From the NCBI GenBank assembly GCA_001949185.1, contig BDGG01000005.1:1415249-1479248 (forward strand): 64,000 bases of DNA. The letters are read 5' to 3'. A model generated the notes under the pieces. It ran no database searches and was not told the DNA's origin. It was given only the letters and a program-made list of their open reading frames with translations. A program made the translations under genes and the position numbers. This DNA is from Ramazzottius varieornatus (Eukaryota; Animalia; Tardigrada). Below, piece after piece: positions 1-64,000 of the stretch. Position 1 is the stretch's first letter; the number at the start of each line of letters is the position of its first letter.

Positions 1-1629
1 GGAAGTTTCGCTCTCGTGGTAAAAACTAGACGCACAGATTACATGATTTTCCGAAGGAGATTGCCTTATTTCATGGGTGGTAAACCTAGATTTTCAGTAC
101 GAACGTTTACCGATGAAAGTGTTCGAGGGTTAGTGGAATGAGGTAAACGGCGTGGAGATTTCTCCGCAGCATTGTTCTGCATACTTGCCTGATCTTAATA
201 ACCCCGACAGGCTTTTTAAAATTGCGCGACGCCTCCGTCTCGTCCAAGGCTAGTATTTGTCGACCTCTGCTTCGTCCTGTAGAGCTTTGAGGAGGATGTG
301 AACAAATTTTTACTGATTTAGATCAAGAAAAAGTGCTGTAGGCAGAAAGGTTCGAAACCTAGACCTGGAATATCCACGCTGAATTTTTTGACTTGAAATC
401 TCCATGCCGACTGACTGAAGAAGATCCTGTAGACCAGATCACACAAAACTCTGCGGATCTGTAATTGTCGGCATGTGACAGTGAAAAAAACGGCGTCAGG
501 CCTGCGCCAAGCGAAAATCGTGGCAGTGGTATGGACGTATTCCACAGTGTGGGCATGCGAATGCCGTGGTAGGAATGCTCCCAGCACAATGATTTTACAG
601 CGTCATCCTAATTTATGTATACTGCTATCCATTTATTTTCACTGTCCCTTCTTGTATTCGCCGAATTCCAGTCCGAATTGGTCCAAACTTTGCCCAGAAA
701 TTCAGAAATATTGTCTAGATGTTCTAGAGCTGTTAAAAACCAGACCAGACCACTTGGAAAGTGGTTTATATGGTTCATGTGGTTCGAGCCACCTCAAACC
801 GTATGGCATCTCAAACCAAACCACTCAAACCGGTTTCGATCATGCGCCAAACCATATAAACCAGTGGTTTATGCGGTATAATATGGTTTGCGGTAAGGGC
901 AAACTTCGTACAAAATCTGCGGATTCCGTGCCAGACCTCGAGCCGAAATTGGCCATCTGGCATTGCCAATCCTTTTCCACCCAGTGCCACCTTGCGCAGC
1001 CGCATCGTTCTGATGAGCTATGACTAGTGATGCACAGCTTTAACTGGGTGCGCACTGTGTCTTACGCTGCCCGACTTGAGAACTACGCCTTCCGTCAGGC
1101 AGAAATCACAATTCCGACAGTGCTGAACAGAATTGATGGCGGAGAAAGGATTGTACTACCGCCTTGCTTGCCACGGTGCCTTTACAATTCCGGCACGCGC
1201 CAGTTTTGCCTGTTTGCGTGTGTTCGTAGAGAAACCAGCAACCAGTTTTCAAAAGTTCAAAGCCGTCTTATGAAGAACACTTTAGGCTTCCAAGCCACGT
1301 GAGCGATTAATCGCCACGTCAATGGATCGACCGGCCAGCAAAGGGATTGGTTTGGCTGCTCGACACCCTTGTTACTAGCAAGCGAGAAACCCTATCGGGA
1401 GTTTTGCTATAACTTGCCTGCTCCCCGGACGTTTGAATGCAAAAATTTATCTCTCTAAAGTGAACTGGGATATCTCTTTCATTCTTACTCAGCAATACCG
1501 TATCAACTTTTACTGAATTCCGGTCGAGAGCACTCAGATCTGTCGCAGCTGGGATTCATCAGCAATAAAGATTTCCACGTGACAATTTCGAGAAAGCTTT
1601 GATTCCTAGTGAAAGAATTTCTTATTGTC

Positions 1630-2160
1630 CAAGCCTACGCTTTCAGATTCGGAAAACATTGCATACGAAAGGCCAGTTTTCCGGTAGTTGCGAAGAAACC
1701 GATCCAAACCTGTCCGCACAGGGGTACCCATCGGTTTAGGGCAACTAGCAGAACCATCGTTGACCGGTTTCGATAGCTCAGGAAGACAAGAAAAACTTAA
1801 AATTGTTAAACTCGCTAAGGTGGCGCAGTGTACAAGTCTGTTTTTCCGGGAAATTTTCGAAAATGTTGTTTGAAAATCGAGCAAGTCGGAATCAAAAGCC
1901 TTCTGGTAGTTACCGAAGCAGACAACATCCAGTCATTCAGAATATCGAATCAGTTCTTTCACCAGATTGCATTGTTTCAGAAAATGAATGGAGAAATAGG
2001 GGTATGTGAAAATTGTGTGCAACTTCTTCTGTCCCAGCTTTGTCTTCCCAGTCTGACTGTGAGGTATTTGTTTGTGTGTTCAAAAGCAAGGAGAGCCTGC
2101 GCACGTTACTTTAAAATAAAAAGGTTGACGGGTGAAGTCAGAAAACGAATTCGAAAGTGC
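1630..2160. mobile_element. Diverged copy of the 3520-4258 MITE family in opposite orientation
   Basis: The reverse complement of ~3555-4085 aligns by eye with ~1660-2160 (e.g. gaagtcagaaaa..ttcgaaagt; gcaagtcg.aatca.aag; ggcgcagtgt). Confidence 0.6.
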
Positions 2161-2296
2161 CCCCCCCCCCCCCAAAAAAAAACAAACAACAAATTTCCGG
2201 ATAAGTTAAGAAGGAAGGGAATGAAAACCTTAGGGTAGCGATGACCCGTGACAGTGACTATATGTCGATTGATTCAATCACCATCCTTCTTGACAG

Positions 2297-3221: not shown

Positions 3222-3519
3222 GAAAAACGAAGTGCAAATTGATCTTCCGTGAGATTCGGTGTTTTTACGACTGTTACGGAAAAAAATCGTATCTGTTGGT
3301 CTGTCAGTATCATGACATAGCCGCACTTAGTTCCTAAGAGAAACAATGTTCGTGCCAGAAACAGATCGTTAGTTTTATAATGCTTCGGGTACCGGCCAAC
3401 AACATTCATACGCACAACTGGATGTGAAACAAGCCGGTTTTCTGTTTGACGTTCAGTAGTTTCCAAGTCACCGGAACACAGGAAATGCGTCTAGAAAAGA
3501 GTAAACAGCGATGTCGAAA

Positions 3520-4258
3520 ATCAGGTTGTAAGGTATGACTTGTCCGTGTTTGGGGAGTGACTTTCGAAATTTTTTTTCTGACTTCGCCGTTGAACTGTTT
3601 GATTTTAAACAAAATTCTATGCAGTATGTAAGCTCTTCTCAATTTTCTGACGCGCCGACGAATGCTATACGATGAGACTGGGAAGAGAGAAGTGGGACAG
3701 AAATAATCACAAGAACTTTTCGCTTTTCGCTTTCATCTATTTCTTTGTTTTATTTTCTGGACAAAAGCATTCCAACAGAAGGGATAGTATGGTATCCCGA
3801 ATGCCAACACACAGTGTCCTTTAGCCACGGCCAGAAAACTTCTGATTTCGACTTGCAGTTTTAAAAAAAACAATTAGCAAAAACTCTTTCGAAAAATCCG
3901 ATCCGCACACTGCGCCGCTTCATTGGGGTTAACGAGTTATGTATTTTTTCATCTTCCTGATTTATCGCAAGGCGTTAACAGTGGTAACGTGGTATAACTA
4001 GTCACCTTAAACTGTTAGATACCTATATGCGGAGCCAAGACTGCATCGGATTTTTCACGAATTCAGGAGAACCCGTCTTCCGTCTGCGGACTTCATCATT
4101 CTTTCCTCCTTTTCACCTGGCTATCTGCTTAACAAAACTGTTTAGCGAAAGTTTTAACCGGATATTTGAGAGTGCTGGGTCTGAAGCTTTGTTTGCCATG
4201 TTTCACAGATTTCTGAAAGCGCATGGAGAAAACAGACAAGTCATACCTTACATCTGAT
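3520..4258. mobile_element. MITE / non-autonomous DNA transposon with ~26-bp terminal inverted repeats (TIRs)
   Basis: tgtaaggtatgacttgtc (~3527-3544) and its reverse complement gacaagtcataccttaca (4235-4252). Confidence 0.7.
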
Positions 4259-5165
4259 AGTATGAAGAAAAGAGTCGGATGAACTGAAAAGCAGTTGATG
4301 CTTCCGGAAATTTCCAGCGAAAGTCGAAGACCGAAACGACGCAGCTCGTGCAGGCGCCCGCGTGCCTCACGACGACGCTTCAAGCAAATCTAATTAAACT
4401 ATCTATATGATGAAAATGCCGAAAGCGTTGACGTGGGCTATCTGTTTACGCTATGCAGAATACGCAGTGTTGTACGACGAGTGAGTAGTACGGGGCATAC
4501 AGACCACGATGCAACTTTGAACTTCAACGCGTGCTAGAAATGGCTCCACTTTTCCGCCCACGACGCCTTTATTATCCGGAACCTTCGGTAACCCTTTTTT
4601 GTTCTATTAGGCTTTAATTTGGCTTTCAAAACGGACTCGAGCGCGCGTTTTCGTGCACACAAGCGGTCATAATTTTTTGAACACCTAATTTTTACACATG
4701 AACGGTAATGACTGGGGAGAGTTTCTCGTTGTCCTTCCCCCTAACATTTCCCTAAAAACCGCCCTTGTTCCCTCAAAAATTCGGCCTCGAACAGCCATCG
4801 TCTTGAACAGCTACGGTTTTTGACAATCGCTAACTCTAACAACTTCGGTTCTGATGACCCCTCTTAGCAAAAACCATGCAAAAATAAACTGGGTAACTGT
4901 TAATGACGATTAAGCTCGGTGTTGAACTGTGTCGACTTGCCTTCCTTGGCTAACTGTTCCGATTTTCTGGAGATGGCATTTCACGCAGTTCGAAACCGTG
5001 AAAGCGATCCAGAAGCAGTGAAGCGAAGCACCACCTGCTGAATCATCTTTCGCAGAAGACCGTTGCCTCAATCGAATCGATGCATGCAGCGCCAAACACA
5101 CTGTTAGTGAATCATGCAGTAAAATTTACATCTGAGACTGCAAGAATTAATTCGTAACAGTAGTA

Positions 5166-61715: not shown

Positions 61716-62631
61716 CTTTTGAAAGTGTCGTGTGTTAGGTTACATGAGACGAAATTTGCTTCTGTGTTCGTATCGGAATAGCGTTGAAGACTTTGATTTT
61801 TTGATCTTGACATAGCCTTCATCGGCCGGATTTTACGTTTATTCTTTTACGAAGTCAAGAGTTTTCTCGTGTTTACATTGTTTCTATCGACAAAATTCCA
61901 TTTTAGCTGGCTTTTGTGTGAACTTGTAAACGCTAGTCTTCTGATACGAAATACGCCGCCATTTGATCGAAACTTAAAACTGCATTGTATCCCGGTGTCC
62001 TCTCATTCTTTTTTGTCTTCTTTCCCTACCATCCTCAAGGTTGGCATCTTCGGCGAGATCCCAGGTAGTTCGTTTCAGGAACCTTGATGAAAGTAGGAAA
62101 ATCGTTCTTTTCGGTCTTTGTGAGTCCAGCAGGGAACAATCGGAAGGCGGTACATGTTCTGAGATGTCCCGGGGTTCGATCCAGTTTTCTGAACTTCCGG
62201 TGGTATCCCAGGAGGTCTTTGCATTTCGAGATTTCCGTGGGACCGGTGTCGAACACTGAGAACCGAACAAGATTTTCCCGGATATCGACTCTGCCACAAT
62301 CGTTCAGCCAATTGGTTCAGCTATGAATGGGGTCTTGATCAGTACAAAACGTCGCGCTAGAAGATGCTGTATCCGAGAAAGTAACCCGGATTTCTTTCAA
62401 CGAAGCTCATGGTGACCTCAAGATTCTTGTATGGTGCCTGCCGGCAGGCAGAACACAGACCCGGATCTGATAAGGGAATCTCCCTCGCACGAGATCTTCT
62501 GTTAGATCAGAAGCTCGTCTCGAGATCATTTCTGTGTTTTCTTGTCGAAAGCGTTTCTGTTCTCGCCTCTTAGTCTCTGTTTTATTCCCTCCCCTAATTT
62601 TCTGTTACAGTTCCTCGTACTCTGGTCCACC

Positions 62632-63766
62632 ATGTCTTTTGGAGGAGGAAGTCAAAACGAGAAGGGAGGTATTGGCAAAAGCAAGAAGGCTGGAATCGTC
62701 TTCCCTGTTGGCCGCATGCATCGTTACGTGAGTAATTCCACCATTACCACCTGTTTTCTCTGCACCAAGAAGCTTTCCTATGGTCATACATGGTTTTTCT
62801 GCTTGCACCTTCCTTTTCTTGCAGATGAAGAAGGGTAATTATGCGGAGAAAATCGGAACTGGGGCTTCCGTTTACGCTGCCGCTGTCATCGAATACCTGG
62901 TTGCGGAAGTCTTGGAACTCGCTGGAAATGCTGCACGTGACAACAAAAAGGGCCGTATCACTCCTCGACATCTCATGATGGCCATTCGCAACGATGAAGA
63001 GGTAAGAAGCGATGGTAACTGGTGAAGAAATTTTACTTCCGTTTCCATCGCTTCTCTCTTAAATTCCGCAGCGTGTGACGAACAGGGAGTCTACTGGTGT
63101 TCCAGCCTGGTTCCCTGACGTCATGCGCCACTGCAGACAAGACATGGTTATACTCTACAGCGAATAATGACTCCCTTTGTAATTCTGCTCTTCTTTTTAC
63201 AGCTGAACCGTCTTCTGGGTAGCGTCATTATCTCTCAAGGAGGCGTCATTCCGAACATCGAGGCGGTCCTGCTGAAGAAACACACATCTAGCGGTCCAGC
63301 AGGAGGAAGTCAGCAGTCTCAATCGCTATCGCAGTCGGCGCTGAAAGAGTCGCAGAAGCCAAACAAGCAACGAGTCACGAGCAAGCGTCCAGTCCCTCCT
63401 GCCAAGAAATCTCCAGTCACTAAGGAACCACAAGGTAACAAGACTCGACCGGAAACCGTCAACGAGGCCAGTGAGGAAGAGTCGTCAGATGCAGAGTCGG
63501 AGGAGGGAGGAGAGAACCAAGAAGCGGCTCCCAACAACGCGCAAACCAACGAAACCCAGAACGCGACTCAGAATAACGGAGAGCAGGAAGAAGGAAGCGA
63601 GGAAGAGGAAAGAGAGGCTTCATCTCCTCCGGTTCCTCGAACTACACGAGCATCATCCAAGCCTCCACAGTCGAAGGCTCCACAAGCAAAGCCCCGGGCC
63701 AAGGCTCCTGCTGGAAAAGGCAAACTTCCAGCTCGAGCCACAGCTGCCGAATCTCAAGAAGCCTAG
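62632..63766 (+). CDS. Intron-containing histone H2A variant (~278 aa): macroH2A-like fold, long disordered tail ending SQEA; exons 62632-62727, 62825-63001, 63203-63766
   Basis: [14 protein letters not shown]|[56 protein letters not shown]|[26 protein letters not shown]; both introns are GT-AG and phase 0. Confidence 0.92.
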
Positions 63767-64000
63767 GTTTGTCTTGTGAGGATCTCCTGATCATTTCAGT
63801 GGGGTAGTGGTGGCTTTCAGTTCTCGGAGACTCTTCTGTCGATGGGAGGTTTCTATTGATGGTTACCGTGTTCGAAGCCCTTTTACGTTTCATTTTCTTG
63901 GCTGATATATTTGAGTCGCTTGTCGTATGGTATTTTTGGTACGATCGACTTTCATGTCTTTATTAGGCAAGGATTTTTTCCCGTCTTTGTATGGTTCGAA

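What the first reader, a model, noticed from the sequence alone, without database searches (positions are those of the whole stretch)
62632..63766. Unusual histone H2A variant: macroH2A-like core and linker, no macrodomain, ~160-aa tail ending in an H2A.X-like SQE motif
Seen: a three-exon ORF of ~278 aa, about twice the length of a canonical H2A. The fold is a mosaic. It has macroH2A-type residues ([18 protein letters not shown]; DNKKGRxTPRH, where canonical H2A has RAGLQFPVGRVHRLLRKG and KKTRIIPRH). It keeps the canonical L1 loop GNYAE and docking region AIRNDEE...QGGVxPNIxAVLL. The acidic patch and the KK ubiquitination site are retained. The tail has PVPPAKKSP, similar to the PPPAKKAKSP of the vertebrate macroH2A1 linker, but then runs to a stop at ...AAESQEA. 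Established: H2A.X is defined by a C-terminal SQ(E/D)-hydrophobic motif phosphorylated by ATM/ATR; macroH2A normally has a macrodomain; introns mark replication-independent variants; long-tailed H2As occur in bdelloid rotifers. Inference: this is a lineage-specific variant, either a macroH2A that replaced its macrodomain with a damage-signalling tail or an H2A.X with a greatly extended tail. It is a candidate for a distinct DNA-damage or stress chromatin system.
Basis: partly seen in the sequence, partly recalled or inferred. Interest (0 to 1): 0.88.

Follow-up and report, generated by a model that had tools for sequence, protein, structure and literature searches.

The report
Long-tailed H2A.X-type histone of a tardigrade
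This is a real, expressed tardigrade (Ramazzottius varieornatus) histone H2A whose ordinary nucleosome core carries a 160-residue disordered tail that ends in the DNA-damage signalling motif; it looks like a stretched H2A.X, not a macroH2A that lost its macrodomain.

Summary
Window 62632-63766 (+) encodes a three-exon, 278-aa H2A identical to the public record RvY_10340 of Ramazzottius varieornatus, annotated only as 'hypothetical protein'. Transcript contigs from three studies use both GT..AG introns. They run through the stop into a roughly 300-nt 3' UTR and never splice onward.

The macroH2A reading is not supported:
- The genome keeps a separate macroH2A with a macrodomain on contig 1. Its fold is very divergent and its introns sit elsewhere.
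- The macroH2A-like residues are two short motifs that the 289-aa relative P0002 does not keep.
- The L1 loop, docking domain, overall score and the NDEE|L intron all match ordinary H2A.
- The linker resemblance is not significant.

The terminal SQEA is not special to this gene. Two of the three histone-cluster H2A genes end in it too. The gene is best read as a solitary H2A.X-type variant whose tail grew by about 120-175 residues between the docking domain and a standard GKGK..SQEA end.

The tail plan is S/Q-rich, basic with K-S-P, strongly acidic, basic, then SQEA. It is shared with a paralog 190 kb away (RvY_10416) and with P0002. No other tail relative turned up among 5.8 billion proteins, and no paper names it. 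Its function is inferred, not shown. An earlier reading by this scan (s1-804737) covers the same stretch.

The parts
62509..62631 (+). 5' UTR. The transcript start is approximate.
   Evidence: Transcript contigs of runs X3, X6 and X7 begin at 62509-62511. There is no upstream ATG in these 123 nt.
62632..62727 (+). Coding exon 1: atypical N-terminal tail with a conserved G-[ST]-Q, then alphaN and the start of alpha1 ([14 protein letters not shown]).
   Evidence: macroH2A.1 ranks 3rd in the PDB for this exon.
62728..62824 (+). Intron 1 (97 nt, phase 0, GT..AG). It is present only in the two long-tailed genes.
   Evidence: Joint 62727>62825 in three runs. The same position occurs in paralog L006 and is absent from the short H2A genes.
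62825..63001 (+). Coding exon 2: L1 loop (KKGNYAE), alpha2, L2 (KKGRITPRH), alpha3 and the acidic patch.
   Evidence: Pfam Histone 32.8 bits. The best PDB matches are canonical H2A. It is 78% identical to the cluster H2A genes and 85% to the paralog.
63002..63202 (+). Intron 2 (201 nt, phase 0) between NDEE and L. It is shared with the cluster H2A genes.
   Evidence: Joint in four runs. Same position and phase in L001, L002, L003 and L006, but not in macroH2A, H2A.Z or the C15 variant.
63203..63280 (+). Docking domain / H2A C-terminal region, ending in LLKK.
   Evidence: Pfam Histone_H2A_C 48.3 bits. The best PDB matches are H2A and H2A.X.
63281..63355 (+). Neutral S/Q-rich stretch with four SQ sites. 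Its start, TSSGP, matches the tail start of the C12 cluster H2A.
   Evidence: Three SQ sites are kept in P0002; the paralog P0010 has only one TQ.
63356..63445 (+). Basic block 1 (net +8) with the conserved KRP and K-S-P..K (AKKSP at 63401-63415).
   Evidence: Invariant K152 R153 P154 K160 S161 P162 K165 in alignment A1. Charge profile.
63446..63616 (+). Acidic, N/Q-rich block (net -18) with SEEE-type sites.
   Evidence: The same block is present in P0010 and P0002.
63617..63739 (+). Basic, proline-rich block 2 (net +10), ending in the conserved PQ.KPR..AGKGK.
   Evidence: A GKG/GGK stretch before SQEA also occurs in the short H2A tails.
63752..63766 (+). Terminal S-Q-E-A followed by the TAG stop.
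   Evidence: Conserved in P0010, in all P0002-cluster members and in two cluster H2A genes.
63767..64000 (+). 3' UTR. It runs about 50-100 nt beyond the window end.
   Evidence: The contigs continue 52-97 nt past 64000. No Rfam histone stem-loop was found. An AGTAAA lies near the contig ends.

Best explanation
RvY_10340 is a solitary, expressed histone H2A variant of the tardigrade Ramazzottius varieornatus. Its core is an ordinary H2A fold, with canonical L1 loop, acidic patch and docking domain, so it should pair with H2B and enter nucleosomes like any H2A (inferred).

Origin. It most likely descends from the tardigrade's own H2A.X-type H2A. The tail begins like the cluster H2A of contig 12 (KK-TS-GP) and ends with the same GKGK..A..SQEA module. 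About 120-175 residues of disordered sequence lie between these ends.

Tail plan. The inserted sequence is conserved in plan rather than in letters: an S/Q-rich stretch, a basic stretch with a K-S-P site, a strongly acidic block and a second basic proline-rich stretch.

Proposed working, all inferred:
- The H2A C-terminus leaves the nucleosome near the DNA entry/exit. The basic stretches would therefore bind linker or neighbouring DNA, as the H2A.W tail and the macroH2A linker do.
- The acidic block would counteract or gate that binding, or hold basic partners.
- The terminal serine, four residues from the end, would be phosphorylated by ATM/ATR-type kinases after DNA breaks, as in H2A.X. The long tether would present it far from the nucleosome surface.
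For: Shown:
- Gene model and expression.
- H2A fold and docking domain above the Pfam cut-offs.
- The best PDB matches for the whole protein, exon 2 and the docking domain are canonical H2A and H2A.X.
- The core is 72-75% identical to canonical H2As, 55% to the genome's macroH2A and 56% to its H2A.Z.
- The phase-0 NDEE|L intron is shared only with the three cluster H2A genes and the paralog.
- The last exon aligns with that of the C12 cluster H2A through KK.TS.GP (E 2e-11).
- SQEA ends two cluster H2As, the paralog and the P0002 relatives.
- The three long-tailed proteins form a clade (99/98) once other fast-evolving variants are left out.
- The tail charge pattern is conserved in all three.
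- Only 8 of 161 tail residues are hydrophobic, the AlphaFold2 model predicts no secondary structure for residues 109-278, and the Atlas finds no fold match.
- The gene lies outside the three H2A-H2B-H3 clusters.

From the literature:
- H2A.X is defined by S at -4, then Q, E/D and a hydrophobic end (PMC2642717).
- A KSPK tail that protects linker DNA can coexist with a working SQ motif in Arabidopsis H2A.W.7 (PMC8208582).
Against: - Nothing here shows nucleosome incorporation, phosphorylation or DNA binding by the tail.
- The last residue is Ala, not the I/L/F/Y of described H2A.X proteins.
- With the genome's macroH2A, the C15 variant and a fly H2A-like protein included, the fold tree groups all of them with the long-tailed proteins (95/87). 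An exclusive clade of long-tailed plus cluster H2As is then disfavoured (p-AU 0.013). I read this as long-branch attraction: the macroH2A branch is 4.78 changes per column, and the rejection disappears (p 0.21) without those rows.
- The match of the extreme C-termini is too short to be significant alone (E 1.2).
- The SQ cluster is weak in the paralog.
Confidence: 0.62

Rival explanations
1. It is a duplicate of the tardigrade macroH2A that lost the macrodomain and later gained an H2A.X-type end.
For: - Seven macroH2A-type residues sit in alphaN and L2. macroH2A.1 ranks 3rd and 1st in the PDB for those two short stretches.
- The genome's macroH2A shares K..FPV..RYM, IEY.VAE and RI[ST]P with it.
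- In the full tree the macroH2A row falls among the long-tailed rows (74/53 to 90/80).
Against: - The macroH2A row is a 4.78-long branch with deviant composition, so its place is unsafe.
- Introns differ: the macroH2A gene has AE|IL, SP|KC and RS|LL and lacks NDEE|L, and this gene has none of the macroH2A introns.
- The L1 loop and docking domain are canonical.
- The relative P0002 has RAGLVFPVGRIHRF and KKRRIAPRH, so the macro-like residues are not ancestral to the family with any certainty.
- A fly H2A-like protein shows similar changes without any macroH2A link.
- The linker similarity is not detectable.
Confidence: 0.08
2. The tail mainly acts as a nucleosome-tethered protective cloud that shields DNA from radicals or drying, as Dsup does in trans. 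The SQEA end would be only an inherited remnant.
For: - The long disordered tail has basic DNA-binding stretches.
- The host is an extremely tolerant tardigrade with a known chromatin protectant.
- Bdelloid rotifers, also desiccation and radiation tolerant, independently lengthened their H2A tails (PMC2642717).
- The transcript is assembled as one contig in every RNA data set laid.
Against: - SQEA and the GKGK module before it are kept in the paralog and in the P0002 relatives although the rest of the tail has drifted to about 40% identity. That argues for selection on the end.
- No protection data exist.
- The tail is net neutral, not polycationic.
Confidence: 0.12
3. It is a stage- or tissue-specific packaging histone, for instance of oocytes or early embryos. 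Cleavage-stage and egg H2A variants of other animals are the model, and it would have no special link to stress.
For: - It is a solitary gene outside the histone clusters.
- Its N-terminal tail is atypical.
- The K-S-P site is of the kind used by cell-cycle kinases in H2A.W (PMC8208582).
Against: - No stage-resolved expression was examined here.
- Transcript contigs were recovered in runs of four different studies, which does not suggest a narrow window of expression, though contigs cannot measure level.
Confidence: 0.08
4. The tail is a largely neutral low-complexity expansion without a function of its own, and the protein simply works as one more H2A.X.
For: - Tail identity is low (40% to P0002) and tail length varies (161, 170 and 214 residues).
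- P0002-cluster members differ by indels in the acidic run.
- The paralog has changes in the otherwise invariant FPVGR.
Against: - The order of blocks, the charge profile and about 40 tail positions are invariant across the three clusters.
- Two paralogs have both been kept.
Confidence: 0.08

Closest known systems
Histone H2A.X, including organisms whose major H2A is of H2A.X type, such as budding yeast
   Same: The core is near-canonical. The serine sits four residues from the C-terminus and is followed by Q and E. A short G/K-rich stretch precedes the motif, as in invertebrate H2A.X tails seen here (P0019, P0194). As in yeast, the cluster H2A genes of this genome carry the motif themselves.
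   Different: An acidic block and two basic blocks are inserted. The last residue is Ala, not I/L/F/Y. The N-terminal tail lacks the usual SGRGK start. The gene is solitary and has two introns.
Arabidopsis H2A.W.7, the rare hybrid H2A.W/H2A.X variant (PMC8208582)
   Same: It is an H2A with an extended tail that combines a K-S-P basic motif, thought to bind linker DNA, with a terminal SQ damage motif. It is the closest analogue for how this protein may work.
   Different: It is a plant lineage with no shared descent. The H2A.W motif is KSPK(K) close to the SQ end. Here K-S-P-x-x-K lies about 115 residues from SQEA, with an acidic block between them. No tail homology was detected.
macroH2A
   Same: It is a large H2A with a basic stretch after the docking domain. 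A few alphaN and L2 residues match.
   Different: There is no macrodomain, and the L1 loop and docking domain are canonical. Introns differ. The genome has its own macroH2A, which is the radiation-induced one in other tardigrades (PMC11233135 supplement).
Bdelloid rotifer H2Abd, H2Abd1 and H2Abd2 (PMC2642717)
   Same: These are lineage-specific H2As with lengthened C-terminal tails in a desiccation- and radiation-tolerant animal. They also arose from canonical H2A.
   Different: Bdelloid tails extend only 28-43 residues beyond LLPKK and lack the SQ(E/D) end. They replace canonical H2A and H2A.X, whereas here the long variants coexist with short H2A.X-type genes. No sequence relation was found.

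Membership tests
Core histone H2A | Histone fold plus H2A docking domain recognised by the family profiles | tested here: met
   PF00125 scores 32.8 bits (cut-off 26.4) on exon 2. PF16211 scores 48.3 bits (cut-off 20) on exon 3.
Core histone H2A | Acidic-patch residues and the conserved DNA- and H2B-contact positions | tested here: met
   E55, E60, E63, D89 and E91 are invariant and E90 nearly invariant in a 35-sequence alignment.
Core histone H2A | Incorporation into nucleosomes with H2B | not testable with these tools
   Needs histone extraction or reconstitution.
H2A.X | Serine four residues from the C-terminus, followed by Q and then E or D | tested here: met
   The protein ends S275-Q-E-A-stop. 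The definition comes from PMC2642717.
H2A.X | Hydrophobic last residue (I/L/F/Y in described members) | tested here: inconclusive
   The last residue is Ala, as in every SQE-bearing H2A of this genome and in P0002. Ala is small and apolar but is not among the residues listed in PMC2642717.
H2A.X | Motif conserved in orthologs | tested here: met
   SQEA is invariant in P0010 and in four full-length P0002-cluster members.
H2A.X | Damage-induced phosphorylation of that serine by ATM/ATR/DNA-PK | not testable with these tools
   Needs mass spectrometry or a phospho-antibody. An antibody against H. exemplaris phospho-H2AX exists (PMC11233135).
macroH2A | C-terminal macrodomain | tested here: not met
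   Pfam finds no Macro match in the protein. Transcripts end after the stop. The only Macro matches in the genome are on contigs 1 and 4.
macroH2A | Histone fold closer to macroH2A than to canonical H2A, including the macroH2A-type L1 loop | tested here: not met
   No macroH2A chain is among the 60 best PDB matches for the whole protein, exon 2 or the docking domain. The core is 55% identical to the genome's macroH2A against 72-75% to canonical H2As. The L1 loop is KKGNYAE. Only alphaN and a 23-aa L2 stretch favour macroH2A.
macroH2A | Gene structure shared with the genome's macroH2A | tested here: not met
   No intron position is shared.
H2A.W | KSPK(K) motif in the C-terminal tail | tested here: inconclusive
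   K-S-P is invariant in the three clusters but is followed by x-x-K, not K. The family is restricted to plants, so any likeness is functional only.
Bdelloid H2Abd-type variants | Tail homologous to the bdelloid tails, without an SQ(E/D) end | tested here: not met
   A tail-only search of 5.8 billion proteins found only P0001 and P0002. An SQEA end is present.

The most novel reading that the evidence does not exclude
Tardigrades of this lineage have built a damage antenna and chromatin guard into the nucleosome itself. It would be an H2A.X whose 160-210-residue disordered tail reaches linker and neighbouring DNA with two basic arms, is switched by an acidic, phosphorylatable middle, and carries extra SQ sites plus the terminal SQEA. 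That would be a cis-acting counterpart of Dsup and an independent parallel to the long-tailed H2As of bdelloid rotifers, contributing to desiccation and radiation tolerance.
Probability: 0.15. Interest if true: 0.8.

Novelty: new variant of a known kind. Interest (0 to 1): 0.58.

Why it matters
Hybrid or greatly extended H2A tails are rare. The plant literature argues that combining tail motifs of different H2A classes is usually selected against (PMC8208582). Here an animal known for extreme DNA-damage tolerance carries two expressed or annotated H2A.X-type genes with tails longer than the histone fold itself. They stand beside a complete set of short H2A.X-type, H2A.Z and macroH2A genes.

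If the tail binds linker DNA or changes how the damage mark is read, it would be a new and directly testable component of tardigrade chromatin biology, next to Dsup and TDR1. It would also be a second, independent case, after bdelloid rotifers, linking long H2A tails to anhydrobiosis.

There is a practical side. Phospho-H2AX antibodies raised against tardigrade C-terminal peptides may also detect these larger proteins, which matters for reading published and future blots.

If the tail proves inert, the finding is a curiosity of histone evolution.

Tried and rejected
- Joined model. The spliced model was searched exon by exon by reference. The joined protein was never typed or sent as letters. 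The public record P0001, identical to the conceptual splice, was used by id instead. Inside scripts, exon translations read from /data were concatenated only for coordinate mapping and for local alignments and trees.
- macroH2A folds of other animals could not be fetched. macroH2A was therefore compared only through PDB rankings and the genome's own copy.
- Fold phylogeny is unresolved. The result depends on whether long-branch variants are included.
- The tail-only search and the Atlas search gave no relatives or fold. The basic block against the PDB gave only a chance cytochrome f match.
- Rfam found no histone 3' stem-loop in any of five H2A loci, only a sub-threshold U7-like hit. This does not separate variant from cluster genes.
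- Anoud et al. 2024: the legend that says which H. exemplaris protein served for the phospho-H2AX antibody is not in the held text. Neither RvY_10340 nor RvY_10416 occurs in the held parts of its tables, which were cut when stored. No paper in the library names these genes.
- An HMGN/Dsup-like stretch (RTTRASSKP, 63638-63664) was considered as an acidic-patch anchor. It is not conserved in P0002 or P0010, so I do not rely on it.
- The AlphaFold2 model has low confidence throughout (mean pLDDT 51.5). It was used only for the absence of predicted structure in the tail.
- Neighbouring ORFs upstream gave no informative Pfam match.

Full report
WHAT IS THERE

Reading the window directly gives a three-exon gene on the + strand. 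The exons are 62632-62727, 62825-63001 and 63203-63766, with GT..AG introns of 97 and 201 nt and a 278-aa product. Pfam places the histone fold on exon 2 and the H2A C-terminal domain at the start of exon 3, both above the curated cut-offs.

A search with exon 3 returned a public protein identical over its whole length. It is RvY_10340 (GAU99316.1) of the tardigrade Ramazzottius varieornatus, called 'hypothetical protein' by NCBI and 'Histone H2A' by UniRef. I searched the model exon by exon by reference and otherwise used that record (P0001) by id. The joined protein was never sent as typed letters.

Contigs of four public runs were laid on 62400-64000. Three of them, each from a different study, give one contig of 1244-1291 nt.
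- Each contig starts at 62509-62511 and carries both predicted joints.
- Each then runs without interruption from 63201 through the stop codon and 52-97 nt beyond the window end.
- No contig splices out of exon 3.
- The 5' UTR of 123 nt has no upstream ATG.

These are assembled contigs. They show the spliced form exists but give neither expression level nor exact ends.

THE H2A FAMILY OF THIS GENOME

Profile and protein searches of the assembly show the following.
- Three ordinary-length H2A genes of 153-164 aa each sit in a histone cluster beside a divergent H2B and an H3. Two end in SQEA and one in SLEA.
- The present gene and a paralog 190 kb away on the same contig (RvY_10416, P0010, 341 aa) both lie alone. 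Both have long tails ending in SQEA.
- There is one H2A.Z gene.
- There is a divergent H2A-like gene on contig 15.
- Several decayed copies also exist.

So the terminal SQEA is not a novelty of the long protein. As in yeast, the major H2A of this animal is already of H2A.X type. All these genes have introns, so introns do not mark variant status here. Lying outside the clusters does.

IS IT A MACROH2A DERIVATIVE

Human macroH2A.1 ranks third among PDB sequences for exon 1. It ranks first for a 23-residue stretch around L2, at 37 against 33.5 bits. Everything else points the other way.
- For the whole protein, for exon 2 and for the docking domain, the 60 best PDB matches are canonical H2A, H2A.X or H2A.J and include no macroH2A.
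- The genome has its own macroH2A on contig 1, with fold exons, a basic linker and macrodomain exons. The supplement of Anoud et al. 2024 names RvY_00439 on that contig as the best match of H. exemplaris BV898_10478, 'core histone macro-H2A.1'. That gene is strongly induced by radiation and bleomycin.
- Over 99 core columns the present protein is 55% identical to that macroH2A. It is 72-75% identical to canonical H2As of animals and fungi, and 80% identical to the two other long-tailed proteins.
- Intron positions separate the genes. The cluster H2A genes and both long-tailed genes share a phase-0 intron between NDEE and L. The macroH2A gene instead has introns at AE|IL (the H2A.Z gene has one at the matching AE|VL), SP|KC and RS|LL.
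- The 289-aa relative P0002 has RAGLVFPVGRIHRF and KKRRIAPRH, so the macroH2A-like letters are not a fixed feature of the family. A fly H2A-like protein shows similar substitutions independently.
- The resemblance of the basic stretch to the macroH2A linker is not detectable. The PDB holds a macroH2A.1 chain of 161 residues (9pm0_A), longer than the 120-residue histone-region chain 1u35_C, yet this stretch does not match it even at E 10.

THE TREE

With all rows, the maximum-likelihood tree groups the long-tailed proteins with the macroH2A, the contig-15 variant and the fly protein (95/87). An exclusive clade of long-tailed plus cluster H2As is then disfavoured (p-AU 0.013).

The macroH2A branch is 4.78 changes per column with deviant composition, and the tool itself warns about its placement. 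Without those three rows the picture changes.
- The long-tailed trio is a clade (99/98).
- The two R. varieornatus paralogs are sisters (95/80).
- The clade sits in an unresolved canonical comb.
- A clade with the cluster H2As is no longer rejected (p 0.21).

I conclude that the 99-column fold cannot resolve the origin. Introns and tail ends are the better markers. I leave 8% for the macroH2A rival.

THE TAIL

Beyond LLKK the protein has 161 residues, the paralog 214 and P0002 170. Only 8 of the 161 are hydrophobic. The plan is shared by all three.
- A neutral S/Q-rich stretch with four SQ sites. P0002 has three; the paralog has one TQ.
- A basic stretch (net +8) with invariant KRP and K-S-P..K.
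- An acidic, N/Q-rich block (net -18).
- A basic proline-rich stretch (net +10) ending in an invariant AGKGK.
- The terminal SQEA.

The start of the tail aligns with the tail start of the contig-12 cluster H2A through KK.TS.GP. The end resembles the G/K-rich run before SQEA in the short tails, and in invertebrate H2A.X tails seen among the hits. On its own that terminal match is too short to be significant (E 1.2).

AlphaFold2 predicts helices only within residues 16-96 and nothing structured after 108, at low confidence throughout. The Atlas finds no feature or fold match. A tail-only search of 5.8 billion proteins finds only the protein itself and P0002. The exhaustive representative search adds only the paralog.

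HOW IT MOST LIKELY WORKS

Shown: an expressed gene, an intact canonical H2A core, and a conserved disordered tail with an H2A.X-type end.

Inferred:
- The protein enters nucleosomes.
- The tail leaves near the DNA entry/exit.
- The basic arms bind linker or neighbouring DNA, as the KSPK tail of plant H2A.W does (PMC8208582).
- The acidic middle modulates that binding.
- S275 is phosphorylated after breaks.

The closest working analogue is Arabidopsis H2A.W.7, a rare hybrid that carries both a KSPK motif and an SQ end. In that protein, phosphorylation of the nearby KSPK blocks reading of the phosphorylated SQ (PMC8208582). Here the two motifs lie about 115 residues apart.

The last residue is Ala, outside the I/L/F/Y set of described H2A.X proteins (PMC2642717). 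Membership in H2A.X is therefore probable but not complete.

NOVELTY

No paper in the library names RvY_10340 or RvY_10416, and none describes long-tailed tardigrade H2As. Bdelloid rotifer H2A tails are far shorter (28-43 residues beyond LLPKK) and lack the SQ end.

I rate this as a new variant of a known kind. It is an H2A.X-type histone with an exceptionally long, patterned tail, restricted as far as can be seen to one tardigrade lineage. The scan's own index holds another first-stage reading of the same stretch that reaches a similar H2A.X-like description.

LIMITS

- No macroH2A folds from other animals could be fetched.
- Expression level, stage and stress response were not measured.
- No function was tested.

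Noticed in passing
L001 (G000:C2:7826800-7827225), L002 (G000:C12:269813-270281), L003 (G000:C2:7595915-7596338): The three ordinary-length H2A genes each lie in a cluster with a divergent H2B and an H3. Each has one intron, and their tails run 41-52 residues beyond LLPKK. Two end in SQEA and one in SLEA, with the Q lost. The major H2A of this tardigrade is thus of H2A.X type.
   Followed up: partly
L028 about 3500-5100, minus strand (G000:C1 about 1271500-1273100): This is a complete macroH2A gene with a very divergent fold: a three-residue insertion in L1, and KC in place of RH after L2. A basic linker and macrodomain exons follow. It corresponds to RvY_00439, the best match of the radiation-induced BV898_10478 of H. 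exemplaris.
   Followed up: partly
L026 about 1224-2250, plus strand (G000:C15 about 345800-346840): This is a further divergent H2A-like gene. Its L1 loop (DHAKYRIS) recalls my recollection of the vertebrate macroH2A L1 loop (not checked with a tool here), yet no macrodomain match lies nearby. Its intron near NDE(E) is in phase 1, two bases from the NDEE|L intron of the other genes.
   Followed up: no
L004, L005, L008, L009, L010, L023, L025: Decayed H2A copies are scattered over several contigs, with broken first exons, LPYIA in place of LPNIA, no SQEA, and some internal stops.
   Followed up: no
L006 (G000:C5:1669780-1670210, minus strand): Paralog RvY_10416 has FSVSR in place of the otherwise invariant FPVGR, and H for N in ELAGN. 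It also has a longer N-terminal tail and a 214-residue C-terminal tail. It may be under looser constraint than the window gene.
   Followed up: no
window 63638-63664: The stretch RTTRASSKP resembles the HMGN/Dsup nucleosome-binding core RRSARLSA in its R..R.S spacing. It is not kept in P0002 or the paralog, so it is probably chance.
   Followed up: partly
window 62400-62693: One low-depth contig of run X1 (1221 nt) runs from about 930 nt upstream of 62400 straight across the transcript start into exon 1. It may be genomic DNA in the library or read-through from upstream.
   Followed up: no
L001, L002, L003, L006, L007: No Rfam histone 3' stem-loop was found in any of the five H2A loci of about 3 kb, cluster genes included, even at E 1. 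The only match is a weak U7-like one in L001 (1957-2012, 20.9 bits, below the gathering score).
   Followed up: no
P0196 (Bradysia coprophila 'histone H2A-like'): A fly H2A-like protein shows several of the same core substitutions as the tardigrade long-tailed proteins: LVFPVGR, RYM, GSGASVY, RITPRH, TISQGG and QPVLL. This points to recurrent, probably convergent changes in fast-evolving H2A variants.
   Followed up: no
runs X8, X9 and X15 (study P5): Three runs labelled as three other organisms (B, C, D) hold the window's transcript words at the same share (0.69) as the runs of organism A.
   Followed up: no
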